Source: Octopus sinensis
Taxonomy: Eukaryota
Length of the DNA stretch: 42,502 bases
Reading direction: 5' to 3'
Assembly (NCBI RefSeq): GCF_006345805.1
Contig: NW_021835344.1
Location: forward strand, 1-42,502
Shown piece by piece: positions 4,001 through 42,502 of the stretch (within the stretch, counting starts at the first letter, position 1; each line of letters begins with the position of its first letter). A model generated the notes under the pieces. The model ran no database searches. It saw only the letters and a program-made list of their open reading frames with translations, and was not told the origin of the DNA. The position numbers and the translations under genes were made by a program.

Positions 4001-4163
4001 GATATTGTGCCGCAGTTGACTTTCAGTCATTTCGCTAAATACTGTACAGTAAATAGCAAATATTTTATTTCTGTTTGAGCTGAAATAAAAAATAAATACA
4101 TACATGTATGTCGGTATGTATGTATGTATGTAGCTAGCTAGCTAGCTAGAAATATACATACAT

Positions 4164-4202
<39 letters not shown>

Positions 4203-12879: not shown

Positions 12880-12936
<57 letters not shown>

Positions 12937-13439: not shown

Positions 13440-13504
<65 letters not shown>

Positions 13505-13572
13505 GTGTATGTGTATATGTAGGTGTATGTGTGTATGTATATATTTATATATATGTGTGTGTTATATGTATG

Positions 13573-13606
<34 letters not shown>

Positions 13607-26582: not shown

Positions 26583-28006
26583 TGTGTGTGTAAATATATA
26601 TATATATATATATATATAACACAGAAGAATGGAGATATCATACATATTGAACCATCCCGTTTCTGTCAGATTGGCAAATCACAAAATCTTGCGATATAGT
26701 AATACTGCGTATTAATCGACCCAACAGTTACAGGGTGTTCTCTTTTCATGTTCTGAGTTCAAAATTTCGAGGACGATTTTACCTTTCATGTTTTTGGGGT
26801 CGATGAATTAAGTACCAGCCGAGCACTACGGTGGATGTAATCGACAAACCCCCAGCCACAAAATTGCAGGCATTGTGCTTATCGTAGAAAGAATATTTTA
26901 GCCCCTTGATTACCAAATTACCAAATGGCTTCGTGGTAGAAATACAGAGGCAATTACAGCAATCATCAGAAATATTTGAATGGAATTTTTGTGGATCTTC
27001 TTCCCTCTGATAACTCCGTTGTCATAAGGATATAATAAGTAATAACAATATATATATGTGTGTGTGTGTATGCTTATATATGCACATACGCATACACACA
27101 CAGGAAAATTTATATATGTGTGAAAGAAGGTTTGTATGTAGGCCACTCTCTCGACTCCAGTTAATTATGTGTATTTATAAACATGGGGTAAACTAGATCA
27201 AATCAACCTTCTGATATTTGAACATAAACTTTTCGATAATAAAACACAGTGCTCGGAAATCATGTTGATCCACTGAAATTTAAATCAAATCATTGTTGTT
27301 TATTACCAACAACATTTAACGAGGAATTGAGAATTTTATGACCTCATTTTATTATTTTTATTTTCTTATAACCAAAAAGAACTTGTTTGCTTACATTGTA
27401 GCTATGCTGGGAAGGAATAAGAAAGCGCCATCTTCATATTTTTCTATTGGGTTGTTATGCAAATATCTGAAAAAGAGACAAATATTACACACTTTAAAAT
27501 AAGTAAAAGTAAATAAATATGTTTTTCCTGTTCAGTACTAAATTGCGTTTCAGTCAACATTAACAGGGTAAATGCTGATATTACACACTATATTGTTTAT
27601 TTCTCTTTATAGTTCTCTGGGAAGTGTTGTTTGAACAAGAATAGGTTCCTTCAATCTAACTTAATTATCCTAAGTGAAAACCTGATAACAAAACAGCAAA
27701 AGATGGAAGGGAATAAAATACAAAAATAAAAACAATAATAAGGAGACTTTCTTATGTGCACAATATGGGTTTTAGTCAATATTCTCATCTATAGTAGAAA
27801 TATCATTCTCTATACATGCAAGGTTCTGTGGCAGGAAAGTTACTTCTCACATCAATGGATTCTTTAGTCCAACTGTGTGGCACCTTGGACAAATAACATT
27901 TACTATAACCTTGGGTCAACTAAGCGTTGTGAGTAAATTTGCTGCAGGAAACTGTGTGGATTCCCTTCGTATATATATAAATATATATATATACATATAT
28001 ATATAC

Positions 28007-28080
<74 letters not shown>

Positions 28081-31000
28081 GTGTGTGCTTGATAACCAAT
28101 ATTGGTTTGTTTACGTCCCCCGTAACTTAGTGATTCCTCAAAAGGTATCCGACTGATTAAGTGCCAGATTTTAAAAATTCAGTACTAAGGATGATTTGTT
28201 CGAGTAAACGCTTGAAGGTAGTACTCCGCATGGCCGCAATCTGATAACTGAAACAAGGAATAGTAAAAGTAATATACTCCAGTAGCAGTGTAATGATAAA
28301 AAAAGGTTTTCAAGACAATAAAATAATAATTATTGCAATAACATTAACCATCATCATCAGGCTATACACATAACTTTCAGATCCTATTCAAAGTACATAA
28401 AACAATGGTCACCTTTTGGTAGAAGATATATACTGGGTACCTATAAATTGACTTTAGAATTTGAACACTTCAGAAGACAATGAAGAACAAGGAGCTCATC
28501 AAATTTATTGGAAATCATTGGCAAACAAATATCAGAAGCATTAGAACACTTCGACGTAGATTTAATTGTTACCAATTCTACGTCGCTAAAAGCCACACTG
28601 CTTTTTTCTTGGTTGATTTTTATAACGGGATTTTTACTAAATAGTCTTCCCATGAAGACGTTCTTTTAAATTTGATTAATCTACACATTTCCTTTGGAAA
28701 TAACTGAGATATTTTGATTCAAAGTCACTTTTTTGCCTTACGCTGCCATTTTTTACCTCGAAAACTTTGAAATATATATTTTAAAGAATCAATTTACAAT
28801 TATTTTAGCTCGAAATGTAGCTTACATCTCGATCATCATTGCCAAAACGATGCAATTAATTCGGTTGAGAGCTGAATTACTAATTAAATCATGTAATAGG
28901 AGTGGAAGAGCTGCACTCTGTTGTTCACAGTCTCTAAGTGAAGTTCAGTAACAAGGACGGGGAGTCAAATGTTGGGGTGCCGGGTGGGATAATCTGTAGT
29001 CACCTTGATACTTGGGTGGATGGAGTTGGCTACTTGCTGGATGCTCTCCATTATGTTCCTCTCTGTTTCCACATTACCGTTACTAGAGCTGGTCTTAACT
29101 GTGATATTAATGCCATATATATACCTACAGTAAATTAGAAGAGTTGTGGACTGTTTTGCCAAGGATTGCTTAGGTTTTCTGATCCACCAGGTCATGAAGA
29201 GGCCGGCAATATCTCCAGATACACCGACACAAATGGCTGCACCTTGAACTTACATGTATAGTTTCAAGCATTTGTCTTATGAAGGAAGGCCGAAGACGCT
29301 CGACATTTGTTTCTCTCGAAAACACGACGCCGTGGTGATCTCATTCTTGCTCACTACATCATAAGCGGAAAGTGTAACTATCGAAAGAGCTGTTCTTCAC
29401 ACCCTGCTCCAGAGCGTCGGCTGCAGGGTCACTCCGAAAAGCTCTATCTACGACGATTTCATCTCAATCGAAGGAGAGGGGCTTTCTCCGTCCGGGTTGC
29501 GGATCCGTGGAATAAGCTGCCGGACGAGATAGTGAAGATGCCGACGACCGCACGGTTCAAAGTCTCTCTTGACCAGAAATAGCCTGAACTCTTTGTATGA
29601 CGACCCTCCCTGTACATAACGCCCTGTCCCCCTACATGGCCTTGCTTTTGCTTTTTGAGACAAAAAATTAAACTAAACTAAACTAGTGATACTTTAGTCT
29701 GTGGTTCTTCAAGGTGGTTCTTACGCTAGCTCCTACTGCCTGTGCAATCATTCCTTTCTCCTAATTGTTGTTCTCAGGGAGTTGGGTGGGCAGGGTCAAG
29801 CCACACCAGCGCTCATTGGTGCATTTATTTACTGCTGAAGTGATGGTGGGTGGTCTAAGAATCTGTGAGCTGGCGGGGTAGAATATATAGTCTAAGAATG
29901 AGACACGGATCACGCGTGTTGACCTCACTTCACATTTCACAGACAATCTCATTACATTATACTCCAGCAAAATCGATGTCAATAGATGGGTAGAGGGAAT
30001 CGGGTCCTTAGTGTCCACTACACAACATGTGAAGAACTTGTAGTGACTAAAAATACTCATTTTATTGAGGATGTCCTCAGTGCTAACATAGAAGAAGAAG
30101 GAGAATAAGGAGGAGAAGAAGAAGAAGAAGAAGAAGAAGAAGAAGAAGAAGCATAAGGAGAAGGAGAAGAAGGAGAAGGAGAAGAAGAAGAAGAAGAAGA
30201 AGAAGAAGGAGAAGAAGAAGAAAAAGAAGAAGAAGAAGAAAAAGAAGAAGAAGAAGAAGAAGGAGAAGAAGAAGAAGAAGAAAAAAAAGAAGAAGAAGAA
30301 GGAGAAGAAAAAGAAAAAGAAGTAGAAGAAGGAGAAGAAGAAGAAATTAATCTAACGACAATGCAGATAAATAACTGCCAGTCGTTGTCATGTCCAGACA
30401 CATCCAAAGAGATATATCATGAATAGAGTCCAGTAGTTGATTCGTCGATATATTAAGGAAATGCGAAAAAATGTCATCGTTCAGAAGATATATGAAGCAG
30501 CAAGAAACGTTGCTTATTTTTCACATCGTATGTAATTGCGACGAAATATTGAATAATGTTCATTATGTGAAGAAAGAATTTATATGGTAGTATAACGAAT
30601 AAGGGAAGAAGAAGAAGGAGGAGAAGAAGAAGAACAACAAGAAAGAGAAGATGAAAAGAAGAAGAAGAAGAAGAAATACAAGGGGAAGAACAAGAAGGAA
30701 AGACGAAGAGGAAGTAGAGGGGAAGAAGAAGAAGAAGAAGGAGAAGGAGCAGAAAAAGAAAAAGAAGAAAAAGAAGAAGTAGAAGAAAAGAAGAGGAAAA
30801 AAGAAGAAGAAGAACAACAACAACAACAAAGACTACAGCAACAATAGCAAAACATTTATTTCGGTGGAAGTCTGGATACATAACCACACGGCACCACAGA
30901 ATCAACAGAACAATGTGTAAGAAAATAGTAGCTAAAACTTATATTAATAGTGCAGATACATACATACATATGAACATACACATATATATTTTCAGGAATA

Positions 31001-34000
31001 ACATTTTTATGCAGACAATTATCAACTGACAGTCATTGACATGTTCAGACTCAATCAAATAAATATAACACGAATATGAGAACTGAATATGATTTACAGT
31101 AATAGAGAGTGAGGAAACATGGAAATAAGGGGATATTAAATTTAAAGACATAGTATATTCCTCATGTATAAACGACAACATTGAAAGAACTTACAATTTC
31201 TCTAAGTTGTGAAGGCCTTGAAACATCTCTTTTTCAATCCTTGAAATTTTATTGTTGTAAAGAGATCTGAAGCAGGAAACAATATTGGTTAGATTGACAT
31301 AGTGTGAATTCCGATAACATATTCAATATTGTTCTTTATGAAGAGGGACAAAATTATAGGAAAATAATACGAGAAGAAGAAGAAAAGGAGAAGACGAAGA
31401 AGAAGAAGAAGAAGGGGAAGAGAGGAAGGGGAAAGAAGAGTCATGGAGGAAGAGAAGGGGGAGAGAAGTAGAAGAAGGAGGAGTTGGAGGAGGAGGAGGA
31501 GGGGAGGTGAAGAAGAATCAGGACAGGGAAGGACAAGGATATGTAGGGGGGAGGAAAATAGGAGAAGGTGCAGAGGGTAAAGTATAAGAGGATATAGAAG
31601 ATTAAAATCTGGAGGAGAAAAAGAAGAAGTAGAAGGGGGAGGATGGGGAGGAGAAGAAGAAGAAGAAAAAGAAGAAGAAGAAGAAGAAGAAGGAGAAGAA
31701 GAAGAAGAAGCGGGAAAAAAGAAGGAGAAAAAGAAAAAGAAAGAGAAGAAGAAAGAAGAGGAATATAGGTGGAGGCGGAGGGGGAAGGAGGAGAAGAAGA
31801 AGAAGAAGAAGACAAAGGAGGAGGAGGAGGAAGGGGAAGTAGAAAAAAAGGAGGAGAAGGAGGAGGAGGAGAAGTAGGAAGAGAAGAAGAAGAAGAAGAA
31901 GAAGAAGAAGAAGAAGAAGAAGAAGAAGATGACACTTTGAAAATCATGGTGTTCAAGACGAAACTGAAATTGTTCTCAAGATATCAGGAAATAATTCAAG
32001 GATAGAGCGATAAATTTTGGGCAAGAAGACATGGCTGAAAAATCAGGGAATATACGGAATCAGAAATCAACATATTCAAACGCACTCATTCGCATTCTTA
32101 CATTCAAAGTTTCAACGACGGAATGCGGTATGCACACTCACATGACACATATTCCCACTCACCCTTGTGGAAATATGGTGAGAGAGATTATTTATTTCAT
32201 ATCGCTTCATCGTCACAAGAATATTAGAAAACACACGCTTACAAGAAATATATCAGCAGTTTAATTGTATCAGGCCAAATATTCCAGCTTACAAGTACAG
32301 TAAGTATTTCAGGTTTACAGATAGAATGTATGTGACTATATTATTCGAATATATATTTTCCGCTTCCACTTCAGTTGCTCTGTTACATAAATAACGTAAA
32401 GTGAATGACAAAATTCGAAGTTGAATGATAATATCGAAACACGAAGGAGAATATTGGAATAAGAAATGGAGGAGGATGCAAAATATAAAATAAAGGAATA
32501 ATATAGTCACATTTCACACAGAACTACATTTATATATGAACATACACATATACTTCAGCTAAAAATATTTGATGCAAACATGTAAACTCACAAACGTTAC
32601 CATTTCTAATACAAATTCATATCAAAATCATTGAAATTTGGGGAACAAAAATGAGTTATTGAGATGCGAATTGAAACAAAGCAACTACAATAAAGGAACA
32701 TTATATTTTTCCTATTATTTCACTTTCTCTCTAAAATGCTCTCTCTTTCATTTACATTGTCTCGCTCTCTCCTATTCTCTTTGTATCTTCCTAAATCTTG
32801 TTCATTCTACAAATTCGAATTGGTTTTGTTTGGTGGAGTCTGAAATATTATACATTTGTGAGCTTATATATCAGCATCAATTATTACTTTCGGAAAATAG
32901 TATCAAGAAATTAAACGAACTTACAGTTCTTTGAAATTTGAAATCCCCGTGAATGTACCTTCTTTGATGGTTGCAATGCTGTTCCCTCCAAGATCTCTAT
33001 AGCAGTAAAGAAAGAGTAAAATAGATTATATGTAAAATATTTGTGATACGACATCAAACACTTTGACTTCAGAATGAAAGAAAGAAAAAGAAGAAAGATA
33101 ACGAAGAAGAAGAAGAACTAGAAAGGAGAAGGAGAAGGAGAAGTAGAAGAAGAAGAAGAAGAAGGAAAATAGACGAGGAGGTGGAGGAGGTGGAGGAGGA
33201 GGTGGAGAGGCGGGGTTTTAGGAGGACGACAAAGGAAGGGATGACTGAGCAGGGGGCCGCTGGGGTAGCATCAGAAGGAGCAGGAAGAGCTGGAGACTGA
33301 GAATAAGAGGAAGAATTGGAAGAGAATGGAAAAGAGGGAGACCAGTGACAAAGCAGAAAGTACAGAGAAGAAAAAGAAGAAAAAGAATAAGAAGAAGAAG
33401 AAGAAGAAGCAGAAGAAGAAGAAGAAGAAGACAAAGAAAAGGAAGAAGTAGAAGAAGAGGAACATGAAGAAGATGAAGAAGGAAAGAAGAAAAAGACGAA
33501 GAAGATGAAGAAGAAGAAGAATAGTAGAGAACGAAGAAATTGAAGAAAAAGGAGGATGAGTAGGACGAAGAGGGGAGGTTGAAGAGGAGAATTGCAATAA
33601 GAAGAAGAAGAAGAAAAGTAGGAGAAGAGGTTGAGGAGAGAGGGGAATAGGAGATTGCAAAAGAAGAAGAACAAACAACAACAACAACAATAGCAAAAAA
33701 TTTATTTTGGGTGGAAGTATGGATAAATACCACACACGGCAGCACAGAATCAAGAGAACAATGTGTAAGAAAATAGTAGCTAAACTTATATTAATAGTGC
33801 AGATACATACATACATATGAACTACACATATATATTTTCAGAATATAATTTTTATGCAGACAAGTATCAACTGACAGTCATTGACATGTTCAGACTCAAT
33901 CAAATAAATATGACACGAATAGAGAACTGAATATGATTTACAGTAATAGAGAGTGATAAAACATGGAAATAAGGGGGATATTAAATTTAAAGACATAGTA

Positions 34001-37000
34001 TATTCCTCAGTATAAACGACAACATTGAAAGAACTTACAATTTCTCTAATTTGTGAAGGCCTTGAAACATCTCTTTTTCAATCCTTAAAATTTTATTTCT
34101 GTAAAGAGATCTGAAGCAGGAAACAATATTGGTTAGATTGACATAGTGTGAATTGCGATAACATATTCAATATTGCTCCTTATTTAAAGGGACACAATTA
34201 TAGGAAAATAATACGAAATGAAGAAGAAAAGGAGGAGACGGGAAAGAAGAAGAAGCAGAAGAAGAAGAAGAAGAAGGAGAAAAAGAAGAAGGAGAAGATG
34301 ATGAAGGAGGAAGAGGAGGAGGAGAATAACAAAAAGGAGAAAATAGGAAGAAGAAGAAGGAGGATGAGGAGGAGTAGAAGAAGTAGAAAGTGGAAGAAGA
34401 AGAAGAAGAAGGAATAGAAGAAGAAGAAGAAGGGGAAGAAGACGAAAAAGAAGGAGAAGAAAAAGGAGAAGCATGAGGATGGGGGAGGGAGAATTACAAG
34501 AAGAAGAAGAAGAAGGAGAAGAAGAAGAAGACAAAAGGAGGTGGGGGAGTGGGAGAGGTAGAATTACAAGAAGAAGAAGAAGGAGAATGAGGAATTGGAT
34601 GCAGAAGTAAAAGGAGGAGAATGAAGGGGAGGAGAAGAAGTAGAAGAAGGAAAAAAGAAGTAGAAGAAAGAGATGAAGAAGAAAACGAATAAGAAGAAGG
34701 AAGACGAGGAGGAAAAAGTAGAAGAAGAACATAAAAAGAAGCAGGATCGGTGACGGGTAGGGGTGGAAGAGAATTACAAGATGAAGAAGGAGGAGGAGCG
34801 GGAGGGAGTGGAGGAGGAAGAGAATTACAAGAAGAAAATGAAGAAGGAGCAGAAGGAAAAAGTAGAAGAAGGAGGAGGAGGACGAGGGGAAGAAGAACAA
34901 AAGAAGAAGAAGAAGAAGAAGAAGAAGAAGGAGAGAAGAAAAAAGGGAGCAGGAGTGAGGAGTAGGAAGAAGAGAAGGTGAAGAAAAAAAAGAAGAAGAT
35001 GAAGGAGAAGGAGGAGGAGGAATAGCAGGAGAGAAGAAGAAAGAAGAATAAGAAGAAGAAGAGAAAGAAGATACATTGAAAATCATGGTCTTCAAGACGA
35101 AACTGAAAATGTTCTCAAAATATCAGGAAATAATTCAAGGATAGAGCGATAAATTTTGGGCGAGAAGACATGGCTGAAAAATCAGGGAATATACGGAATC
35201 AGAAATCAACATATTCAATTGCACTCATACGCATTCTTATATTCATAGTATCAACGACGGAATGCGCTATGCACACTCACATCACACATATTCCCACTCA
35301 CCCTTGTGGAAATATGTGAGAAGATTATTATTTCATATCGCTTCATTGTCACAAGAATATTAGAAAACACAGGCTTACAAGAAACATATCAGCAGTTTCA
35401 TTGTATCAGGCCAAATATTCCAGCTTACAAGTACAGTAAGTATTTCAGGTTTACAGATAGAATGTATGTGACTATATTATACGAATATATATTTTCCGCT
35501 TCCACTTCAGTTGCTCTATTACATAAATAACGGGAAGTAAATGACAAAATTCGAAGTTGAATGATAATATCGAAACACGAAGGAGAATATTGAAATAAGA
35601 AATGGAGGAGGATGCAAAATATAAAATAAAGGAATAATATAGTCACATATCACACAGAACTACACTTATATATGAACATACACATATACTTCAGCTAAAA
35701 ATATTTGATGCAAACATGTAAACTCACAAACGTTACCATTTCTAATTACAATTCATATCAAAATCATTGAAATTTGTGGAACAAAAATGAGTTATTGAGA
35801 TGCGAATTGAAACAAAGCAACTACAATAAAGGAACATTATATTTTTCCTATTATTTCACTTTCTACCTCAATTTCTCTCTCTCTTCTCTCTTTGTGTCTC
35901 GCTTACTTACTCCCTCTTGTATATCTTCCTAAATCGTGTTCATTCTACAAATTCTAATTCATTTTTTTTGATGGAGTCTGAAATTTTATACAATTGTGAG
36001 CTTATATATCAGCATCAATTATTACTTTCGGAAAATAGTATCAAGAAACTGAACGAACTTACAAGTAGTTTAAATTTGAAAGCCCCGTGAATGCTCCTTC
36101 TTTGATGGTTGCTATGTTGTTGTAACGAAGATATCTATAGCAGTAAAGAAAGAGTAAAATAGATTATTTGGAAAATATTTGTGATACGACATCAAACACT
36201 GTGACTTCAGAATGAAAGGAATAAAAAGAAGAAATATAACGAAGAAGAAAAAGAAGAAGAAGAAGAAGAAGGAAGAGGAAGAGAAGAAGAAGAAAAAGAA
36301 GAATAAGGAGGAGGAAGAGGAGAAGAAGAAGAAGAAGAAGTAGAAGAAAGAGATGAAGAAGAAAACGAATAAGAAGAAGGAAGACGAGGAGGAAAAAGTA
36401 GAAGAAGAACATAAAAAGAAGCAGGATCGGTGACGGGTAGGGGTGGAAGAGAATTACAAGATGAAGAAGGAGGAGGAGCGGGAGGGAGTGGAGGAGGAAG
36501 AGAATTACAAGAAGAAAATGAAGAAGGAGCAGAAAGAAAAAGTAGAAGAAGAAGGAGGAGGAGGAGGAGGAGAAGAAGAACAAAAGAAGAAGAAGAAGAA
36601 GAAGAAGAAGAAGGAGAGAAGAAAAAGGAGGAGCAGGAGTGGAGGAGTAGGAAGAAGAGAAGGTGAGAAAAAAGAAGAAGATTAAGGAGAAGGAGGAGGA
36701 GAATAGCAGGAGAGGAGAAGAGAAGAAGAAAAGAAGAAGAAGAAAAGAGATACATTGAAAATCATGTCTTCAAGACGAAACTGAAAATGTTCTCAAAATA
36801 TCAGGAAATAATTCAAGGATAGAGCGATAAATTTTGGGCGAGAAGACATGGCTGAAAAATCAGGGAATATACGGAATCAGAAATCAACATATTCAATTGC
36901 ACTCATACGCATTCTTATATTCATAGTATCAACGACGGAATGCGCTATGCACACTCACATTCACACATATTCCCACTCACCCTTGTGGAAATATGGTGAG

Positions 37001-40000
37001 AGATTATTTATTTCATATCGCTTCATTGTCACAAGAATATTAGAAAACACAGGCTTACAAGAAACATATCAGCAGTTTCATTGTATCAGGCCAAATATTC
37101 CAGCTTACAAGTACAGTAAGTATTTCAGGTTTACAGATAGAATGTATGTGACTATATTATACGAATATATATTTTCCGCTTCCACTTCAGTTGCTCTATT
37201 ACATAAATAACGGGAAGTAAATGACAAAATTCGAAGTTGAATGATAATATCGAAACCGAAGGAGAATATTGAAATAGAAATGGGGAGGATGCAAATATAA
37301 AATAAAGGAATAATATAGTCACATATCACACAGAACTACACTTATGATATGAACATACACATAACTTCAGCTAAAAATATTTGATGCAAACATGTAAACT
37401 CACAAACGTTACCATTTCTAATACAAATTCATATCAAAATCATTGAAATTTGTGGAACAAAAATGAGTTATTGAGATGCGAATTGAAACAAAGCAACTAC
37501 AATAAAGGAACATTATATTTTTCCTATTATTTCACTTTCTACCTCAATTTCTCTCTCTTTCTCTCTTTGTGTCTCGCTTACTTACTCCCTCTTTGTATCT
37601 TCCTAAATCGTGTTCATTCTACAAATTCGAATTCATTTTGTTTGATGGAGTCTGAAATTTTATACAATTGTGAGCTTATATATCAGCATCAATTATTACT
37701 TTCGGAAAATAGTATCAAGAAACTGAACGAACTTACAAGTAGTTTAAATTTGAAAGCCCCGTGAATGCTCCTTCTTTGATGGTTGCTATGTTGTTGTAAC
37801 GAATATCTATAGCAGTAAGAAAGAGTAAATTAGATTATTTGGAAAATATTTGTGATACGACATCAAACACTGTGACTTCAGAATGAAAGGAATAAAAAGA
37901 AGAAATATAACGAAGAAGAAAAAGAAGAAGAAGAAGAAGAAGAAGAAGAAGAAGGAAGAGGAAGAGAAGAAGAAGAAAAAGAAGAATAAGGAGGAGGAAG
38001 AGGAGAAGAAGAAGAAGAAGTAGAAGAAAACGTAGAAGAAGAAAGGAGAAGATAAAGGAGTAGAAGACCTAGAAGAAGAAAAAGAAGAAGAGGAGGCGGA
38101 GGAGGCGGAGAAGCGGAGCAGGAGGAGAGGTGGGGATGTTAGGAGGAGGACAAAGGAATGGATGATTGAGGAGGGGCAGCTGGGGATAGCAGCAGAAGGA
38201 GCAGGAAGAGCAGGAGGATGAGAATAAGAGGAAGAATTGGCAGAGAATGGAAAAGAGGGAGACCATTGAAGAAGCAGAAAGTACAGAGAAGAAAAAGAAG
38301 AAGAGGAAAAGAAGAAGTAGAACACGAAGAAGAAGAAGATGAAGTAGAAGAAGAAGAAGAGGAAGAAGAAGAAGACGACGAAGAAGAAGAGGAACATGCA
38401 GGAGATGAAGAAGGAAAGAAGAAGACGAAGAAGATGAAGAAGAAGAAAAAAAGAATGCAAAGAAGAAGACAAAGAAGAAGTAGAACATGAAGAAAAGTAA
38501 CAAGAAGAAGAAGAAGACGAAGTAGAAGAAGAATAACAGGAAGAAGAAGCAGAAGCAGAAGAAAGAGATGAAGAAGCAGAAGAAGAAAAGAAGAAGAAGA
38601 AGAAAAGAAAAAGAAGGAGGAGAAGGAGCAGAAGGAGGAGGGGAGGTTGGAAGAAGAAGAAGAAAAAGAAGGAGAAGAAGAAGAAGAAGAAGATGAAAAG
38701 AAGAAGAAGAAGAAGAAGAAGAAGAAGAAGAGAAGAATACATTGAAAATCATGTTGTTAAAGACGAAACTGAAAATGTTCTCAGAATATCAGGAAATAAT
38801 TCAAGGATAGATCGATAAATTTTGGGCGAGAAGACATGGCTGAAAAATCAGGGAATATACGGAATCAGAAATCAACATATTCAAACGCACTCATACACAT
38901 TCTTATATTCATAGTATCAACGACGGAATGCGGTATGCACACTCACATCACACATATTCCCACTCACCCTTGTGGAAATATGGTGAGAGAGATTATTTAT
39001 TTCATATCGCTTCATTGTCACAAGAATATTAGAAAACACACGCTTACAAGAAATATATCAGCAGTTTCATTGTATCAGGCCAAATATCCCAGCTTACAAG
39101 TACAGTAAGTATTTCAGGTTTACAGATAGAATGTATGTGACTATATTATTCGAATATATATTTTCCGCTTCCACTTCAGTTGCTCTATTACATAAATAAC
39201 GTGAAGTGAATGACAAAATACGACGTTGAATGATAATATCGAAACACGAAGGAGAATATTGAAATAAGAAATGGAGGAGGATGTAAAATACAAAATAAAG
39301 GAATGATATAGTCACATTTCACACAGAACTACACTTATATATGAACATACACATATACTTCAGGTAAAAATATTTGATGCAAACATATAAACTCACAAAC
39401 GTTACCATTTCTAATACAAATTCATATCAAATTCATTGAAATTTGGGGAACAAAACTGAGTTATTGAGATGCGAATTGAAACAAAGCAACTACAATAAAG
39501 GAACATTATATTTCTCCTATTACTTCACTTTCTCCCCAAAATTCTCTCGCTTTCTTTCACATTGTCTCAATCTCTCATATTCTCTTTGTATCTTCCTAAA
39601 TCGTGTTCGATCCTCAAATTTGAATTAATTTTGTTTAGTTCAGTCTCAAATTTTATACATTTGTGAGCTTAGATATCAACATCAATTATTACTTTCGGAT
39701 AATAGTATCAAGAAACTGAACGAACTTACAAGTAGTTTAAATTTGAAAGCCCCGTGAATGCTCCTTCTTTGATGGTTGCTATGTTGTTGGAACCAAGATA
39801 TCTATAGCAGTAAAGAAAGATTAAAATAGATTATATGGAAAATATTTGTGATACGATATCAAACACTGTGACATCTGAATGAAAGGAAGAAAAAGAAGAA
39901 AGATAACGAAGAAGAAGAAGAAGAAGAAGAAGAAGGAAGAGGAAGAGAAGAAGAAGAATAAAAAGAAGAATAAAGAGGAGGAAGAGGAGAAGAAGAAGAA

Positions 40001-42414
40001 AAAGTAGAAGAGGAGGCGGAGGAGGCGGAGCAGGAGGAGAGGTGGGGATGTTAGGAGGAGGACAAAGGAATGGATGACTGAGGAGGGGCAGCTGGGGATA
40101 GCAGCAGAAGGAGCAGGAAGAGTAGGGGGATGAAAAATAAGAGGGAAGTATTGGAAGAGAATGGAAAAGAGGGAGACCATTGAAGAAGCAGAAAGTACAG
40201 AGAAGAAAAAGAAGAAGAAGAAAAGAAGGCAAAGAAGAAGACAAAGAAGAAGTAGAACACGAAGAAAAGTAACACGAAGAAGAGAAGATAGAGTAGAAGA
40301 AGAATAAGAGGAAGAAGAAGAAGAAAAAGAAGTAGAAGAAGCAGAAGCAGAAGAAGGAGTAGAAGAAGAAGAAGAAGAAGAAGAAGGAAGAGGAGGAAAA
40401 AGGAGGAGGAGGAGAATGATGGGGAAGAATAAGTAGGAGAAGATGAAAAAGAAGATGAAGGAGGAGGAGGATGAGAATAACAAAAAGAAGAATATAAGAA
40501 GAAGAAAGAGGAGTAGGAGGAGAAGTAAATGTTGAAGTAGAAAGTAGTAGAAGAAGAAGAAGAAGAAGGAGAAGAAGTATAAGAAGAAAAAAAGAGTAGA
40601 AAAATGAGAAGAAGAAAAGAAAAAGGAGAAGGAGGAAACGAAGAAGAAGACGAATTAGAAGAAGACGCAGAATAAGAAGAAAAAGATGCGGGAGAGGAGG
40701 GGGAGGAGGAGAATTACAAGAAAAAAAGAGGAGGAGGGGCGGAGAGGATTGGGAAGAAAGAAAGAAGACGAAAAAAGAAGTAGAAGAGGAAGTGGAAAAA
40801 GGAGGAGGAAGCAATGAAGTGGAAAAGTAGGAGTAGAAGAAAAAGAAGAAGAATAAGAAGAAGGAGGAGGAGGAGGAGGCGTAGTTGAAAAAGTTGAAAG
40901 TAGAAGAGGATGTAGGAGAAGAAGACGAAGAAATAAGTAGAAGCGATAGAAGAAGAAAAGAATAAGGAGAATGAGAAGAAGAAGAAGAAGAAGAAGAAGA
41001 AGACTACGAAGAATGAAAAGAGTAGAAGAAGCAGAAGCAGAAGAGGAGTAGAAAGAAGAAGAATACAAGAAGAAAAAGAAGAAGAAGAAAGAAAATTAGA
41101 AGAGGAAGAGGAGGAGGATCAGGGGGAGGAGGAGAAGAAGTAGAAAAAAGAAAAGAAGAAAAAGAAGAGAAGAGAAGAAGAAGCAGAATAAGAGATGAAG
41201 AAGAAGAGAAGAAGAAGAGAAGAAAAAAGAAGGAGGAAAGAGGCATCAGAGATGGTGAGGTTGGAAGAAGAAGAAGAAAAAGAAGAAGATAAGAAGAAGA
41301 AGAAAAGAAGAAGAAGAAAAGAGAAGAAGAAGAAGAAGAAAAAAGAAGAAGAAAGAAAGAAGATACATTGAAAATCATGTTGTTAAAGACAAACTGAAAT
41401 GTTCTCAGAATATCAGAAAATAATTCAAGGAGAAGAACGATAATTTGGGCGAGAAGACATGGCTGAAAAATCAGGGAATCACGGAATCAGAAATCACATA
41501 TTCAAATGCACTCATACGCATTCTTATATCATAGTATCAACGACGAATGCGCTATGCACACTCACATCACCATATTCCCACTCACCCTTATGGAAATATG
41601 GTGAGAGATTATTATTTCATATCGCTTCATTGTCACAAGAATATTAGAAAACACACGCTTACAAGAAATATATCAGCAGTTTCAATGTATCAGGCGAAAT
41701 ATTCCAGCTTACAAGTACAGTAAGTATTTCAGGTTTACAGATAGAATGTATGTGACTATATTATTCGATTATATATTTTCCGCTTCCACTTCAGTTGCTC
41801 TCTTACATAAATAACGTGAAGTGAATGACAAAATTCGAAGTTGAATGATAATATCGAAACACGAAGGAGAATATTGAAATAAGAAATGGAGGAGGATGTA
41901 AAATATAAAATAAAGGAATAATATAGTCACATTTCACACAGAACTACACTTATATATGAACATACACATATACTTCAGCTAAAAATATTTGATGCAAACA
42001 TGTAAACTCACAAACGTTACAATTTCTAATACAATTCATATCAAAATCATTGAAAATTTGGGAACAAAAATGATTTATTTAGATGCGAATTGAATCAAAG
42101 CAACTACAATAAAGGAACATTATATTCTTCCTATTATTTCAATTTCTCTCTCAAATTCTCTCTCTTTCTTTCACATTGTCTCGCTCTCTCCTATTCTCTT
42201 TGTATCTTCCTAAATCTTGTTCATTCTACAAATTTGAATTGATTTTGTTCGGGGCAGTCTGAAATGTTATACATTTGTGAGCTTATATTTCAGCATCAAT
42301 TATTACTTTCGGATAATAGTATCAAGAAACTGAAGAACTTACAAGTATTTTAAATTTGAAAGCCCCGTGAATGCTCCTTCTTTGATGGTTGAAATGTTGT
42401 TGGCACCAAGATTT
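860..42414 (-). CDS. Partial multi-exon gene: adhesion-GPCR-like ectodomain (LRR x8 + LRR-CT + LU/Ly6-like + SEA-like + HRM); 5' end and GAIN/7TM not identified in window
   Basis: Exons in transcript order: 42414-42343, 39801-39730, 37806-37737, 36134-36063, 34110-34039, 32996-32925, 31266-31195, 27466-27395, 23073-22917, 18026-17941, 15977-15794, 11639-11557, 10552-10500, 4079-3925, 2518-2404, 1000-860. All have AG acceptors and GT donors. Phases chain consistently (LRR exons 2-2, then 2-1, 1-0, 0-1, 1-0, 0-2, 2-1, 1-2, 2-1). The joined translation gives recognisable LRR, CxC-type LRR-CT, CCxxxxCN and HRM motifs. Three exons need small indel corrections. Confidence 0.85.
1795..1985 (+). mobile_element. 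SINE copy, same family as 1-197
   Basis: gattacatagacccc...cttattttatcgatcccg...aaagtcgacc...tttgatctcagaatgtaaag. Confidence 0.75.
2005..2165 (+). mobile_element. SINE copy, same family, tandem with the previous copy
   Basis: ggataagtcg...ccccagtgctcaattggtatttatttcatcgaaccg...ggcaaagtcgaccttggcggaatttgaactcagaac. Confidence 0.75.
2404..2518 (-). CDS. Exon: N-terminal half of HRM domain (M)[37 protein letters not shown](C)
   Basis: Acceptor cttctttttcag and donor gttcgt; 115 nt, phase 1 to 2. Matches the C..W.xT.xG.....PC....A.R.C HRM pattern. Confidence 0.88.
3925..4079 (-). CDS. Exon: SEA-like domain part 3 [51 protein letters not shown]
   Basis: Acceptor tattttttatttcag and donor gtaagt; 155 nt, phase 2 to 1. 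Fits both neighbouring exons. Confidence 0.85.
4487..4539 (-). ncRNA. Minimal type-I hammerhead ribozyme motif, minus strand (also at 5033-5085, 5580-5632, 6123-6175, 6668-6720)
   Basis: Exact reverse complement of the + strand motif (tgagaacgtacgtttc...tcatcagctca). These copies are sense to the host pre-mRNA. Confidence 0.8.
7075..7127 (+). ncRNA. Minimal type-I hammerhead ribozyme motif (also at 7621-7673, 8166-8218, 8715-8767)
   Basis: Sequence reads tgag-CTGATGA-t aga agt...act aa tct t-GAAA-c gtac g-T T-ctca. The catalytic core is intact. Stem I is UGAG/CUCA, extendable to AAGG/CCUU; stem II is AGA-AGU/ACU-UCU; stem III is 2 bp with a palindromic ACGUACGU segment. Predicted cleavage is after GUU at 7123. 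Confidence 0.8.
10500..10552 (-). CDS. Exon: SEA-like domain part 2 [17 protein letters not shown](G)
   Basis: Acceptor ggctttttcag and donor gtaagc; 53 nt, phase 0 to 2. Bridges the 11557 and 4079 exons exactly. Confidence 0.82.
10663..10957. mobile_element. MITE (~295 bp) with ~38-bp imperfect terminal inverted repeats and TA flanks
   Basis: Left end ta|ttctgaaacgcaggataatgctaatgatataacgtgaac. The reverse complement of the right end reads ta|ttctcaaacgcaggataatgctaatagtatagcatgaac. No coding capacity. Confidence 0.75.
11557..11639 (-). CDS. Exon: SEA-like domain part 1 (G)[27 protein letters not shown]
   Basis: Acceptor caatccatag and donor gtgagt; 83 nt, phase 1 to 0. Confidence 0.82.
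12066..12686 (+). mobile_element. 5'-truncated Penelope-like element: RT-linker and GIY-YIG endonuclease, frameshifted
   Basis: [31 protein letters not shown]...[22 protein letters not shown]...[20 protein letters not shown]...TLDAHIW...KWKLL..A..Y..G...CDLC..E..EIL...LLNK.SE...C.H; three 1-nt frameshifts; 5' end directly after (TA)n. Confidence 0.9.
12760..14790. repeat. Compound (TA)n/(TG)n/(TATG)n microsatellite field with two ~100-bp duplicated islands (~13855-13957 and ~14005-14108)
   Basis: Direct inspection; agactagccttctaagagtgtagacatgaa occurs twice. Confidence 0.9.
15310..15607 (-). mobile_element. R4/Dong-clade non-LTR retrotransposon fragment (post-RT region), degenerate
   Basis: [66 protein letters not shown]....D..Y.KR..G.KGMISV; flanked by microsatellites. 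Confidence 0.85.
15794..15977 (-). CDS. Exon: LU/Ly6-uPAR-like domain C-terminal part [61 protein letters not shown]
   Basis: Acceptor ctattattacag and donor gtaagt; 184 nt, phase 0 to 1. Ends in CxxCCxxxxCN, the three-finger/LU signature. Confidence 0.92.
17585..17850 (+). mobile_element. Degenerate CORE-like SINE
   Basis: gcgtccttgaacaaggcacttcatttcactttgtcccagtc resembles the SINE CORE segment. Confidence 0.4.
17941..18026 (-). CDS. Exon: LU-like domain N-terminal part (N)[28 protein letters not shown]
   Basis: Acceptor ttgtattctgtag and donor gtaaac; 86 nt, phase 1 to 0. Joins in frame to the LRR-CT exon and to the 15977 exon. Confidence 0.85.
18674..18815 (+). mobile_element. 3' end of an RTE-like LINE: terminal C2H2-type finger, short 3' UTR and (TATG)n tail
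   Basis: [27 protein letters not shown] matches the CxxCxxxCxSxxGLxSHxRxH ending of RTE-type ORFs. Confidence 0.65.
18850..20069 (-). mobile_element. R4/Dong-clade LINE, 5'-truncated degenerate RT region
   Basis: HSWMLEAL...[15 protein letters not shown]...FFVDDLK.YAK...[12 protein letters not shown]...[10 protein letters not shown]...WTLDEIR....KSRKILT...FH....[13 protein letters not shown]....FECRII...KTMHGY; (TACA)n on both sides. Confidence 0.9.
20255..20445 (-). mobile_element. 3' end of an R4/Dong-like LINE followed by (TACA)n
   Basis: [17 protein letters not shown] resembles the ...IQKxALLGT..ILRK C-terminus of restriction-like-endonuclease LINEs. Confidence 0.5.
21415..21620 (-). 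mobile_element. SINE copy, same family as 1-197
   Basis: Reverse complement contains gtcgattggatcgaccccagt...cgaaaggataaaagcaaagtcgacctctgtggaatttgaacacagaacgtg...ctgccagcttgccgcc. Confidence 0.8.
22917..23073 (-). CDS. Exon: LRR C-terminal cap NLE[+1 indel][49 protein letters not shown]
   Basis: Acceptor ttctctttattattacag and donor gtaagt. N-x-C-x-C...C...C is the LRR-CT pattern. The exon is 157 nt and needs 158 for phase 2 to 1; for example, one missing A in gaaac. Confidence 0.8.
23672..23771. repeat. (AAT)n microsatellite
   Basis: About 33 near-perfect AAT units. Confidence 0.95.
23772..24040 (+). mobile_element. Short 3'-terminal fragment of an R4/Dong LINE inserted at (TAA)n
   Basis: [28 protein letters not shown]...VEHL/(K)[16 protein letters not shown] is the conserved C-terminus of R4/Dong ORFs. 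Confidence 0.85.
24041..24760. repeat. Compound (GAT)n microsatellite with GGT/TAT/AAT variants
   Basis: Direct inspection; this is the source of the spurious poly-Met ORF. Confidence 0.95.
25490..26045. repeat. 167-bp tandem minisatellite (~3 units plus a shorter lead unit)
   Basis: agagatgaca at 25491, 25621, 25788 and 25955 (spacings 130, 167, 167). Confidence 0.9.
26700..26900 (-). mobile_element. Degenerate SINE copy, same family as 1-197
   Basis: Reverse complement contains gtcgattacatcc...ctggtacttaattcatcgacccc...tttgaactcagaacatg. Confidence 0.65.
27395..27466 (-). CDS. 72-nt LRR exon [24 protein letters not shown] (last LRR before the cap)
   Basis: Acceptor tttgtctctttttcag and donor gtaagc; phase 2 to 2; LxxNxIxxxxxxAF pattern. 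Confidence 0.9.
27820..28270 (+). mobile_element. CORE-type SINE with internal (TA)n(TG)n tract
   Basis: Degenerate tRNA-like head, then gtggcaccttggacaaa...actataaccttggg, a microsatellite, and the tail tttacgtcccccgtaacttag...gcatggccgca...actgaaacaag. Confidence 0.7.
28930..30040 (-). mobile_element. Penelope-like reverse transcriptase fragment, interrupted by a CR1-type insertion
   Basis: 30040-29686: [11 protein letters not shown]...[14 protein letters not shown]...[15 protein letters not shown]. 29236-28930: [19 protein letters not shown]...YCRYI(YG)INI...[29 protein letters not shown]. Confidence 0.8.
29237..29685 (+). mobile_element. 3' end of a CR1/L2-group LINE with (AAACT)n tail
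   Basis: LSYEGR.KTL.../TRRRGDLI...LQGHSEKL...F.LN.RR.AFSVRV..PWNKLP.EIV.......FK..LD; tail aaactaaactaaact. Confidence 0.9.
30085..30345. repeat. (GAA)n microsatellite
   Basis: Direct inspection. Confidence 0.95.
31195..31266 (-). CDS. 72-nt LRR exon, type A: [24 protein letters not shown]
   Basis: Acceptor tttcctgcttcag and donor gtaagt; phase 2 to 2; typical 24-aa extracellular LRR. Confidence 0.92.
32925..32996 (-). CDS. 72-nt LRR exon, type B: [24 protein letters not shown]
   Basis: Acceptor ctttactgctatag and donor gtaagt; phase 2 to 2. Confidence 0.9.
34039..34110 (-). CDS. 72-nt LRR exon, type A: [24 protein letters not shown]
   Basis: Same splice context as 31195-31266; 4 substitutions relative to it. 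Confidence 0.92.
36063..36134 (-). CDS. 72-nt LRR exon, type B: [24 protein letters not shown]
   Basis: Acceptor ctttactgctatag and donor gtaagt; phase 2 to 2. Confidence 0.92.
37737..37806 (-). CDS. 70-nt copy of a type B LRR exon (2-nt deletion relative to 36063-36134; frameshifting if real)
   Basis: Identical to 36063-36134 except gtaacgaatatct versus gtaacgaagatatct on the + strand; splice sites intact. Confidence 0.6.
39730..39801 (-). CDS. 72-nt LRR exon, type B: [24 protein letters not shown]
   Basis: AG/GT intact; phase 2 to 2. Confidence 0.92.
42343..42414 (-). CDS. 72-nt LRR exon, type B: [24 protein letters not shown]
   Basis: AG/GT intact; phase 2 to 2. Confidence 0.92.
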
Positions 42415-42502
42415 CTATAGCAGTAAAGAAAGAGTAAAATAGATTATATGGAAAATATTTGTGACACGACATCAAACACTGTGACTTTAGAATGAAAGGA
42501 AG

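What the first reader, a model, noticed from the sequence alone, without database searches (positions are those of the whole stretch)
30830..42502. LRR ectodomain built from duplicating one-exon cassettes: a possible combinatorial receptor
Seen in sequence: the apparent macrosatellite is a series of intron+exon modules in transcript order B-B-B-B-A-B-A, each carrying one 72-nt phase-2/phase-2 LRR exon (one copy reads 70 nt). Established: symmetric exons of length 3n can be skipped, duplicated or lost without a frameshift. Inference: LRR number and order can vary between alleles through unequal crossover and between transcripts through exon skipping. That would diversify a receptor surface in a way analogous to lamprey VLR LRR modules or Dscam exon arrays, with a possible immune, self-recognition or chemosensory role.
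Basis: partly seen in the sequence, partly recalled or inferred. Interest (0 to 1): 0.88.

Follow-up and report, generated by a model that had tools for sequence, protein, structure and literature searches.

The report
Octopus LRR gene with duplicated exons
This is the leucine-rich-repeat part of an octopus gene from a large octopus-specific family related to adhesion GPCRs. Each 24-residue repeat is its own 72-base exon, duplicated together with its intron; that design is already known for LRR genes, and the proposed combinatorial splicing is unproven.

Summary
On the minus strand there are seven cassette exons in the order B-B-B-B-A-B-A. Each is AG|72 nt|GTAAGT in phase 2 and encodes one 24-residue LRR; copy B3 is 70 nt.

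The gene runs on through the whole window. After the array come a terminal LRR exon, an LRRCT cap, a Cys-rich domain, a ferredoxin-like (SEA-like) module and a weakly matching HRM. Both ends of the gene lie outside the window.

Relatives are confined to Octopus sinensis and O. vulgaris. Full-length relatives carry LRR + GPS + 7tm_2, which matches the octopus-specific adhesion-GPCR expansion of Ritschard et al. 2019.

The repeat units are real diverged copies (about 93% identical; B3/B4 98.4%), not an assembly over-expansion. Codons for the concave beta-strand face differ 4-5 times more than the flanking introns. LRR number in annotated relatives ranges from about 3 to about 20. So germline diversification by cassette duplication, decay and selection is supported.

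Exon skipping is only predicted. Annotated isoforms of paralogues differ in steps of 24 aa, but several carry chimeric cassettes that suggest cross-mapping between paralogues. Nothing points to VLR-like assembly or Dscam-like exclusive choice. The same 72-nt phase-2 architecture is known from gonadotropin receptors and brown-algal ROCO genes.

This copy also has three single-base frameshifts, which may be assembly errors or recent decay.

The parts
42343..42414 (-). LRR cassette exon B1 (72 nt, phase 2): [23 protein letters not shown](L)
39730..39801 (-). LRR cassette exon B2 (72 nt, phase 2): [23 protein letters not shown](L)
37737..37806 (-). LRR cassette exon B3. It is 70 nt (2-nt deletion relative to B4), so including it shifts the frame and gives a stop in A1. 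Either a pseudo-exon or a consensus error.
36063..36134 (-). LRR cassette exon B4 (72 nt): [23 protein letters not shown](L). Its unit is 98.4% identical to the B3 unit.
34039..34110 (-). LRR cassette exon A1 (72 nt): [23 protein letters not shown](L)
32925..32996 (-). LRR cassette exon B5 (72 nt): [23 protein letters not shown](L)
31195..31266 (-). LRR cassette exon A2 (72 nt): [23 protein letters not shown](L)
30079..41377 (-). Span that holds all the cassette introns. Each intron is a unique segment followed by a long pyrimidine (UUC)n-rich tract of 0.25-1.5 kb that ends 72-90 nt upstream of the next acceptor. Tracts on the + strand: 30079-30355, 30584-30833, 31355-31943, 33068-33671, 34200-35083, 36208-36764, 37879-38751, 39873-41377. 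Such tracts occur nowhere else in the window.
30430..30495 (-). Decayed A-type cassette. The upstream intron is still homologous to A1/A2, the acceptor cttcAG has become cttcAT, and the exon is internally deleted. Coordinates are approximate.
27395..27466 (-). Terminal LRR exon (72 nt, phase 2): [23 protein letters not shown]
22917..23073 (-). LRRCT cap exon (..[48 protein letters not shown]). One base is missing from an A-run at about 23062-23064, which shifts the frame. An alternative in-frame acceptor lies 51 nt upstream at 23124.
17941..18026 (-). First exon of the Cys-rich domain (Ly6/uPAR-like by its cysteine pattern). It reads CQTSSG where relatives have CQTCSG.
   Evidence: no Pfam hit
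15794..15977 (-). Second exon of the Cys-rich domain (PVCRF...[16 protein letters not shown]), 98% identical to O. sinensis P0087.
11557..11639 (-). First exon of the ferredoxin-like (SEA-like) module ([27 protein letters not shown]).
   Evidence: fold
10500..10552 (-). Second exon of the SEA-like module ([18 protein letters not shown]).
3925..4079 (-). Third exon of the SEA-like module ([51 protein letters not shown]).
2404..2518 (-). First exon of the hormone-receptor-motif (HRM) region ([37 protein letters not shown]).
   Evidence: the HRM match is weak and seen only in relatives
860..1000 (-). Second exon of the HRM region. It has two single-base deletions (GG to G, AAAA to AAA) that shift the frame. 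The gene continues beyond position 1.

Best explanation
Region 30830-42502 is the LRR-coding stretch of one long gene (over 42 kb) on the minus strand. The gene belongs to an octopus-specific multigene family. Family members have the layout signal peptide - LRRNT - variable number of 24-residue LRRs - LRRCT - Cys-rich domain - SEA-like module - HRM, and full-length relatives continue into GAIN/GPS and a family-B 7TM domain, i.e. an adhesion GPCR.

Each LRR is a separate 72-nt phase-2 exon. The array grew by tandem duplication of whole intron+exon units. Unit boundaries lie in the long (GAA/TTC)n tracts; unequal crossing-over in those tracts is my inference. The array loses units by decay: one dead A cassette is present, and the 70-nt B3 may be another.

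After duplication the scaffold codons stay nearly identical, while the five codons on the concave beta-strand face (x2, x3, x5, x7, x8 of LxxLxLxxN) diverge far faster than the introns. The binding surface is therefore diversified in the germline, between cassettes and between paralogues. Because all cassettes are symmetric, skipping them keeps the frame and is plausible, but it has not been demonstrated.

Whether this particular copy is expressed and intact is open.
For: Shown:
- Exon anatomy and phases. With three one-base placeholders and B3 left out, a 15-exon chain reads open for 493 codons.
- The spliced product hits LRR_8 at E = 6e-50.
- The best relatives are only O. sinensis and O. 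vulgaris proteins, which share the signal peptide MFHHVVSYRR.. and A/B-type cassettes in varying order.
- Relatives P0092, P0097, P0101 and P0104 carry LRR_8 + GPS + 7tm_2, and P0092 also a Death domain. This matches 'group 3' of Ritschard et al. 2019: an octopus-specific adhesion-GPCR expansion, with LRR in 5 of 22 members and one Death domain (PMC6408891).
- B units are 92.6-94% identical, each with 25-32 private substitutions. B3/B4 are 98.4% identical with 18 substitutions.
- Purine tracts flank every unit.
- A dead A cassette is present.
- Entropy over 63 distinct cassettes peaks at cassette positions 1, 3, 4, 22 and 23.
- In eight B exons with their flanks (four from the window, four from O. 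sinensis loci), diversity at those codons is 0.45, against 0.098 in adjacent intron (0 of 100000 permutations reach it) and 0.079 in scaffold codons. Codon differences are 106 nonsynonymous to 8 synonymous there, against 68 to 49 in the scaffold.
- An AlphaFold model of relative P0058 has pLDDT 88-97 in the LRR part, with one beta-strand per 24 residues at cassette positions 23, 24 | 1.
- The closest folds are Nogo receptor, NGL-3, LINGO-1, hagfish VLR and LGR4.
- LRR counts in annotated family members range from about 3 to about 20.
Against: - This copy has four frame-breaking lesions: B3 lacks 2 nt, the LRRCT exon lacks 1 nt, and the second HRM exon lacks 1 nt at each of two sites. It also has a Cys-to-Ser change in the Cys-rich domain. 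It may therefore be a dying copy.
- No transcript evidence exists for this locus.
- Introns may be homogenised by gene conversion, which would lower the 'neutral' baseline used in the selection test.
- The eight exons come from paralogues of unknown relationship, and the sample is small.
- The closest complete models (P0089, P0077, P0042) end in ..TEDRTAETNF with no transmembrane segment, and no GAIN or 7TM exon lies within 10 kb downstream in the O. sinensis counterpart. This subgroup may thus encode a secreted ectodomain-only protein rather than a receptor.
- Recombination within the GAA tracts is inferred from unit boundaries only.
Confidence: 0.75

Rival explanations
1. One reading: regulated, combinatorial inclusion or skipping of individual LRR cassette exons gives many receptor isoforms from one gene, forming a repertoire for recognition (immune, self-recognition or chemosensory).
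For: - All intact cassettes are 72 nt and phase 2/2.
- RefSeq lists isoforms X1-X13 of one O. sinensis paralogue at 409, 385, 361 and 337 aa, and X2-X5 of another paralogue that each lack one cassette.
- The O. vulgaris annotation used Iso-Seq and PASA (PMC10700109). It has isoform pairs that differ by 6 cassettes (P0077/P0079) and by 9 cassettes (P0089/P0090).
- Each cassette is preceded by a UCUU-rich tract of 0.25-1.5 kb. Such tracts could bind PTB-type splicing repressors; this is my inference from general knowledge.
- In brown-algal ROCO genes the same architecture is reported with alternative splicing (PMC11378527).
Against: - At least four RefSeq isoform cassettes are chimeras of two genomic exons: [13 protein letters not shown] joined to A-, V- or T-FTGLS.., and [13 protein letters not shown] joined to [11 protein letters not shown]. 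These need splice junctions in mid-exon, as expected when transcripts of other paralogues or alleles are forced onto this locus.
- Removal of a block of repeated exons is also the typical product of reverse-transcriptase template switching and of ambiguous spliced alignment.
- The 3' cassettes are present in all models.
- There is no transcript evidence for the window's own gene.
Confidence: 0.3
2. This copy is a recently inactivated pseudogene. The array is a decaying relic, not a working receptor gene.
For: - Four frame-breaking deletions, a lost conserved cysteine and a dead A cassette.
- No annotated protein in the databases matches the window at 100%.
Against: - Every lesion is a deletion, and all three single-base ones lie in homopolymer runs.
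- There are no in-frame stop codons in 493 codons, and all 16 splice-site pairs are canonical.
- Private 1-nt deletions cluster in units B1 (11) and B3 (7), while B2, B4 and B5 have none. This looks like patchy polishing.
- If the window comes from the O. vulgaris assembly, that assembly is ONT R9.4.1 polished with short reads (PMC10700109), which leaves this kind of error in repeats. The source of the window is not known.
Confidence: 0.25
3. The array is an assembly over-expansion: one or two real units copied by the assembler.
For: - B3 and B4 differ by only 1.6% plus small indels, within the range of haplotype divergence.
- O. sinensis contigs and scaffolds break inside such arrays.
Against: - All other unit pairs differ by 6-7%, with 25-32 private substitutions each and different hypervariable codons.
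- The (GAA)n tracts differ in length and sequence.
- The A and B units are unrelated in most of their intron.
Confidence: 0.05
4. VLR-like somatic assembly: the cassettes are donor modules copied into an incomplete germline gene.
For: - The LRR fold resembles hagfish VLR (TM 0.75 normalised to the target, rmsd 1.6 A).
- The concave positions are hypervariable.
Against: - Every cassette has its own canonical acceptor and donor and lies in transcript order inside one gene.
- Annotated mRNAs of relatives are explained by ordinary splicing.
- Nothing seen here requires a somatic mechanism.
Confidence: 0.02

Closest known systems
Octopus-specific adhesion-GPCR expansion ('group 3' of Ritschard et al. 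2019, PMC6408891)
   Same: Relatives of the window's product found here carry LRR_8 + GPS + 7tm_2, and one also a Death domain. Those are the domains the paper reports for group 3. The family is restricted to octopus, clustered in the genome, and reported as under positive selection and expressed in axial nerve cord, suckers and skin.
   Different: The paper works at the level of the 7TM domain. The passages I retrieved do not mention the one-exon LRR cassettes, their intron units or the hypervariable concave codons. The window contains no 7TM, and its closest complete models end without one.
Brown-algal LRR-ROCO genes (Zambounis et al. 2012; Teng et al. 2024, PMC11378527)
   Same: Each LRR is one 72-bp exon in phase 2. 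There is intense tandem exon duplication and shuffling, positive selection at a few LRR positions, and annotated splice variants with different LRR combinations. These genes were proposed as a diversified receptor repertoire.
   Different: They are cytoplasmic LRR-ROC-COR GTPases in a stramenopile, not an extracellular LRRNT/LRRCT-capped ectodomain in an animal. The resemblance is convergent or simply generic to LRR genes.
Glycoprotein-hormone receptor / LGR genes; also Slit genes (Slit from my own knowledge)
   Same: One LRR per exon of about 72 nt, with all introns in phase 2. This has long been explained by duplication of a prototype exon (Koo 1991 and Kobe & Deisenhofer 1994, as cited in PMC11378527). 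LGR4 is among the close structural matches.
   Different: Those arrays are old, fixed in number and conserved between species. Here the intron units are still 93-98% identical, and cassette number differs among close paralogues.
ADGRA2/3 (GPR124/125) and ADGRG6 (GPR126) adhesion GPCRs
   Same: N-terminal LRRs with a cap, a weak HRM match, GAIN/GPS and 7tm_2 in relatives. Pfam PF26588 is on record for relatives, and UniRef names one of them 'ADGRA2/3 GAIN domain-containing protein'. RefSeq names several members 'adhesion GPCR G6-like'. The module before the HRM folds as beta-alpha-beta-beta-alpha, and its top fold match, though not significant, is the Adgrg6 ectodomain.
   Different: No Ig domain was found. 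A Cys-rich Ly6/uPAR-like domain and SEA-like modules take its place. LRR number is variable instead of about four. The comparison of domain orders rests on my own knowledge.
Lamprey/hagfish variable lymphocyte receptors
   Same: 24-residue LRR solenoid with LRRNT/LRRCT caps, and variability concentrated on concave-face positions.
   Different: VLR diversity is made somatically by copying donor cassettes without splice sites into an incomplete gene. Here the cassettes are ordinary exons and the diversity seen is germline.
Arthropod Dscam1 exon clusters
   Same: Tandem arrays of duplicated symmetric exons that could diversify an extracellular surface.
   Different: Dscam picks exactly one exon per cluster, using docking and selector RNA pairing. 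Here many cassettes are included in series, and no such complementarity was found in the array.

Membership tests
LRR genes built from one-LRR 72-nt phase-2 exons (gonadotropin receptor/LGR, brown-algal ROCO type) | Each LRR is encoded by its own exon of about 72 nt. | tested here: met
   Seven exons of exactly 72 nt plus one of 70 nt, each encoding one 24-residue LRR.
LRR genes built from one-LRR 72-nt phase-2 exons (gonadotropin receptor/LGR, brown-algal ROCO type) | All flanking introns are in the same phase (phase 2), so the exons are symmetric. | tested here: met
   Each junction codon is TT/CT + A = Leu. The chain reads open across all junctions.
LRR genes built from one-LRR 72-nt phase-2 exons (gonadotropin receptor/LGR, brown-algal ROCO type) | There is evidence of tandem exon duplication. 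| tested here: met
   The intron+exon units are 93-98% identical.
Adhesion GPCR (family B2) | GAIN domain with a GPS autoproteolysis motif. | not testable with these tools
   The window ends inside the gene after the HRM exons. Relatives P0092, P0097, P0100, P0101, P0104 and P0054 have GPS. The closest models, P0089, P0077 and P0042, have none.
Adhesion GPCR (family B2) | 7tm_2 transmembrane domain. | not testable with these tools
   It is not in the window. It is present in relatives P0092, P0097, P0101 and P0104. It is absent from the 10 kb downstream of the O. sinensis counterpart L003.
Adhesion GPCR (family B2) | Hormone-receptor motif (HRM) upstream of GAIN. | tested here: inconclusive
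   Pfam HRM gives E = 0.0007-0.005 in relatives, below the gathering score. The window's product gives no hit, because its frameshifts are marked with X.
ADGRA2/3 subfamily | LRR + LRRCT followed by an Ig domain. | tested here: not met
   No Ig family appears in any Pfam scan of the window's product or of relatives. A Cys-rich domain and a SEA-like module follow the LRRCT instead.
Octopus 'group 3' adhesion-GPCR expansion (Ritschard 2019) | Restricted to octopus; the domain set includes GPS/7TM, with LRR in some members and Death in one. | tested here: met
   All close hits are O. sinensis or O. vulgaris. The domain sets match. Membership of the window's own copy rests on homology across the LRRCT-to-HRM part, not on a 7TM.
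Lamprey-type VLR system | Donor cassettes lack splice signals and are copied somatically into an incomplete gene. | tested here: not met
   All cassettes have canonical AG/GT sites and lie in transcript order within one gene. Somatic change itself cannot be tested here.
Dscam-type mutually exclusive exon cluster | Exactly one exon of the cluster is included per mRNA. | tested here: not met
   Annotated products of relatives include 3 to about 20 cassettes in series.
Dscam-type mutually exclusive exon cluster | Docking and selector complementary sequences. | tested here: not met
   Only low-complexity or 71-73% inverted matches occur in 27000-42502. The upstream constitutive intron lies outside the window, so the test is partial.
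Ly6/uPAR (three-finger) domain | About ten cysteines ending in CCxxxxCN; match to a Pfam or fold model. | tested here: inconclusive
   The cysteine pattern, including [11 protein letters not shown], is visible in the sequence. There is no Pfam hit at E <= 10, and the AlphaFold pLDDT for this stretch is below 45.

The most novel reading that the evidence does not exclude
Octopuses may use cassette-exon choice within these tandem LRR arrays, multiplied over dozens of clustered paralogues (adhesion GPCRs and secreted ectodomain-only forms), to give cells of the suckers, skin or axial nerve cord a combinatorial set of hypervariable LRR surfaces. That would be an LRR-based counterpart of Dscam or clustered-protocadherin identity codes, or a germline-plus-splicing recognition repertoire for contact chemosensation or self/non-self discrimination.
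Probability: 0.12. Interest if true: 0.85.

Novelty: new member of a known kind. Interest (0 to 1): 0.45.

Why it matters
The gene family is already on record as one of the few octopus-specific receptor expansions. It is reported as expressed in arm nerve cord, suckers and skin.

What this window adds is the exon-level picture. The ligand-binding part is a young, still-turning-over array of single-LRR exons, and its concave-face codons evolve several times faster than the introns around them. That makes the family a concrete candidate for a rapidly diversifying surface-recognition system in a cephalopod.

It also gives a direct test. The hypervariable codons can serve as barcodes to assign long cDNA reads to cassettes and to count real isoforms.

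There is a practical warning as well. These arrays break or corrupt current octopus assemblies, so annotated 'LRRC4-like', 'slit-like' and 'LINGO-like' fragments and their many 'isoforms' should not be taken at face value.

Tried and rejected
- Regex scans for further LRR exons were too noisy or missed the exons. I replaced them with an HMM search of the six-frame translation.
- Looking up P0001 by exact sequence found no contig. The P0038 gene model spans 105 kb, so no DNA was returned.
- A second homology search with the signal peptide + LRRNT returned only three proteins, a limit of the word index.
- The AlphaFold model of P0041 (LRRCT to second module) was poor: mean pLDDT 46, with only residues 180-270 usable. 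Its fold search gave no match at E <= 0.001. The best was the Adgrg6 ectodomain at E = 0.002, so 'SEA-like' remains a lead.
- Pfam found no Ly6/uPAR or SEA family.
- I compared indels in the window and in O. sinensis L003 to decide between assembly error and real frameshifts. Both sequences carry many 1-nt indels, so the comparison was indecisive.
- The apparent inversion of the LRR array in O. sinensis turned out to sit at a 100-N scaffold gap, so it says nothing about biology.
- The octopus skin-mucus proteome contains a multi-isoform 'LINGO1-B-like' LRR protein (LOC115230596), but its signal peptide differs, so it is not this family as far as can be told.
- Three TE-like ORFs and one further ORF gave no Pfam hit.
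- Literature searches found no description of these cassette arrays in cephalopods. The library is incomplete, so this is weak evidence of novelty.

Full report
**1. What is in the sequence**

The window is AT-rich, microsatellite-rich eukaryotic DNA. Between 30.8 kb and the right end, direct-repeat analysis finds five copies of a unit of about 1.1 kb and two copies of a shorter unit. These are separated by long (GAA)n-rich stretches.

Read on the minus strand, each unit holds one short exon: AG | 72 nt | GTAAGTTC. Exact coordinates, from a splice-aware scan and direct extraction:
- B1 42343-42414
- B2 39730-39801
- B3 37737-37806
- B4 36063-36134
- A1 34039-34110
- B5 32925-32996
- A2 31195-31266

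Six exons are 72 nt. B3 is 70 nt and lacks 'CT' relative to its near-twin B4.

Every exon starts with one base and ends with two (phase 2/2). The junction codon is always TT/CT + A = Leu. Each exon encodes xLxxNxIxxIxxxxFxxLxxLxxL.

An HMM built from six of the peptides finds exactly these seven sites in the six-frame translation (E about 1e-16 to 1e-18) and nothing else above noise. The spliced product matches Pfam LRR_8 at E = 6e-50.

**2. The array is part of a much longer gene**

Protein searches with the spliced LRRs hit almost only Octopus sinensis proteins. These share an identical signal peptide and LRRNT (MFHHVVSYRRSLVLILCTILFLETQADSDIC...), followed by A- and B-type LRRs in different orders.

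A longer O. vulgaris relative allowed the rest of the window to be mapped by tblastn. All of the following lie on the minus strand:
- a terminal LRR exon, 27395-27466
- an LRRCT cap exon, 22917-23073
- two exons of a Cys-rich domain, 17941-18026 and 15794-15977; it looks Ly6/uPAR-like by its cysteine pattern, including [11 protein letters not shown]
- three exons of a module that AlphaFold models as beta-alpha-beta-beta-alpha, at 11557-11639, 10500-10552 and 3925-4079
- two exons of a region that matches the Pfam hormone-receptor motif weakly in relatives, at 2404-2518 and 860-1000

All splice sites are canonical. The signal-peptide/LRRNT exon lies beyond 42502 and the 3' end lies beyond position 1. 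The window stops 82 nt upstream of B1, so the array probably continues.

**3. What family it belongs to**

An exhaustive HMMER search with a bridging relative (P0046) finds about 35 cluster representatives at E <= 1e-30. The long ones carry LRR_8 + GPS + 7tm_2, and one also carries a Death domain.

That is the domain set Ritschard et al. 2019 (PMC6408891) reported for their octopus-specific 'group 3' adhesion-GPCR expansion. They describe LRR in 5 of 22 members, one Death domain, genomic co-localisation, signs of positive selection, and expression in axial nerve cord, suckers and skin.

The window's closest complete models (P0089, P0077, P0042) end after a second SEA-like module in ..TEDRTAETNF, without a transmembrane segment. 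No GAIN or 7TM exon lies within 10 kb downstream in the O. sinensis counterpart. Another close relative, P0100, does run into GAIN-GPS-7TM.

So the family contains true adhesion GPCRs and, if the models are right, ectodomain-only forms. Which of the two the window's gene is cannot be told from the window.

**4. The copies are real**

The B units differ pairwise by 6-7%, each with 25-32 private substitutions. B3/B4 differ by 1.6% (18 substitutions). This excludes a simple assembly over-expansion, except perhaps for the B3/B4 pair.

Window units are as similar to a B unit at a paralogous O. sinensis locus (92-93%) as they are to each other.

Unit homology begins and ends exactly at the purine tracts. 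Such tracts (0.25-1.5 kb, pyrimidine-rich in the transcript, ending 72-90 nt before each acceptor) occur only in the array. That unequal exchange happens within these tracts is my inference.

Cassette death is visible. At about 30430-30495 an A-type unit keeps its intron homology but has lost the acceptor AG and most of the exon.

A 94-97% identical O. sinensis region has a different cassette series next to the terminal LRR exon: B, B and no A. Orthology is not established, and that scaffold has a gap at the junction.

**5. Diversification of the binding face**

Across 63 distinct cassettes from the window and the retrieved relatives (a few unrelated LRR hits also passed the filter), entropy is near zero at the scaffold positions and highest at cassette positions 1, 3, 4, 22 and 23.

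In the LRR consensus LxxLxLxxN these are x5, x7, x8, x2 and x3, the solvent-exposed residues of the concave beta-sheet. This is established LRR structural knowledge.

An AlphaFold model of relative P0058 has pLDDT 88-97 in the LRR part. It puts one strand per repeat at positions 23, 24 | 1, so each strand straddles an exon junction. The closest solved folds are Nogo receptor, NGL-3, LINGO-1, hagfish VLR and LGR4.

At the DNA level I compared eight B exons with their flanks. Diversity at the five concave codons is 0.45. It is 0.098 in adjacent intron (0 of 100000 random intron samples reach 0.45) and 0.079 in scaffold codons. Differing codon pairs are 106 nonsynonymous to 8 synonymous at the concave codons, against 68 to 49 in the scaffold.

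This is the pattern expected of diversifying selection on the ligand-binding face.

Caveats: the sample is small, the paralogues are of unknown relationship, and gene conversion may have homogenised the introns.

**6. Exon skipping**

The claim is plausible by design but not shown.

RefSeq lists isoforms X1-X13 of one O. sinensis paralogue at 409, 385, 361 and 337 aa, and X2-X5 of another paralogue that each lack one cassette. The O. vulgaris annotation used Iso-Seq and PASA (PMC10700109). It has isoform pairs that differ by blocks of 6 and 9 cassettes.

Decoding these isoforms shows that all differences are in whole cassettes. But four RefSeq cassettes are chimeras of two genomic exons joined in the invariant ..IKEG|.F.. 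stretch. Such junctions are what one expects when transcripts of unassembled paralogues or alleles are aligned to the wrong locus.

Block deletions between repeats are also a classic reverse-transcription artefact.

Annotated products include many cassettes in series, and no docking/selector-type complementarity is seen. A Dscam-like mechanism is therefore not supported. The cassettes are ordinary exons, so a VLR-like mechanism is not indicated either.

**7. State of this copy**

Besides the 70-nt B3, three single-base deletions break the frame. One is in an A-run of the LRRCT exon. Two are in the second HRM exon (GG to G, AAAA to AAA). With placeholders at those three sites and B3 left out, the 15-exon chain reads open for 493 codons with no stop.

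Private 1-nt deletions in the intron units cluster in B1 (11) and B3 (7) and are absent from B2, B4 and B5.

This pattern, deletions only, mostly in homopolymers and patchy, fits residual long-read consensus errors in a repeat that short reads cannot polish. The O. vulgaris reference was made that way (ONT R9.4.1 + Hypo). However, the source of the window is unknown, and a comparison with O. sinensis was indecisive. A recently inactivated gene cannot be excluded.

**8. Comparison with what is known, and verdict**

One LRR per 72-nt phase-2 exon, grown by exon duplication, is a long-known design in gonadotropin receptors. It is described, together with exon shuffling, positive selection and splice variants, for brown-algal ROCO genes (PMC11378527). 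From my own knowledge, LGR and Slit genes are built the same way. The gene family itself is already described (PMC6408891).

What appears undescribed in the literature I could search is the following: in this octopus family the LRR part is a young, turning-over array of intron+exon cassettes with hypervariable concave codons.

I rate it a new member of a known kind and moderately interesting. The combinatorial-receptor reading is a testable but minority possibility.

Noticed in passing
window 4142-8965: A 546-bp satellite has about 5 copies on the + strand (4142-6956), followed directly by about 3.6 inverted copies (6959-8965). Together they form a near-perfect palindrome centred at about 6957, with arms up to 1007 nt that are 100% complementary. 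It lies in the intron between exons 10500-10552 and 3925-4079. It could be a real foldback or a long-read foldback artefact.
   Followed up: partly
window ~30430-30495 (-): A decayed A-type LRR cassette. The upstream intron is homologous to A1/A2, the acceptor AG is mutated to AT, and the exon is internally deleted.
   Followed up: yes
window 17941-18026 (-): The first exon of the Cys-rich domain reads CQTSSG where all retrieved relatives read CQTCSG, so a conserved cysteine is lost.
   Followed up: partly
window 23074-23124 (-): An in-frame alternative acceptor lies 51 nt upstream of the LRRCT exon. It adds [17 protein letters not shown]. Several O. vulgaris models use it (P0077, P0038, P0100), but O. 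sinensis models such as P0041 and P0058 do not.
   Followed up: partly
L003 9845-9944 (O. sinensis CM016887.1): A 100-N scaffold gap sits exactly between the LRR array and the 3' exons of the counterpart gene, and the array is in the opposite orientation there. L001 and L002 gene models also end at contig ends inside such arrays. These arrays break assemblies.
   Followed up: yes
window 24043-24767; 25536-26014; 12860-13645: Long simple repeats lie in the introns: (ATG)n of 725 nt, a 167-bp tandem repeat with 2.9 copies, and about 0.8 kb of (TGTA)n-rich sequence.
   Followed up: no
window 19489-19761 (-), 29307-29582 (+), 12189-12548 (+): These ORFs look like fragments of transposable-element proteins by eye (the first like a reverse-transcriptase C-terminal part). 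None gives a Pfam hit at E <= 0.1.
   Followed up: partly
relatives P0089, P0040, P0042, P0077 (not in the window): Several models in both octopus species end with a second SEA-like module and the same tail, ..LDESSSTGNGTEDR(A/T)AETNF, without a transmembrane segment. This suggests secreted ectodomain-only paralogues of the adhesion GPCRs, or a shared alternative terminal exon.
   Followed up: partly
PMC10138644 supplementary tables: The O. vulgaris skin-mucus proteome lists a multi-isoform 'LINGO1-B-like' LRR protein (LOC115230596, A0A7E6EKW4). It has a similar signal-peptide/LRRNT design but a different sequence, so it is possibly a sister family.
   Followed up: partly
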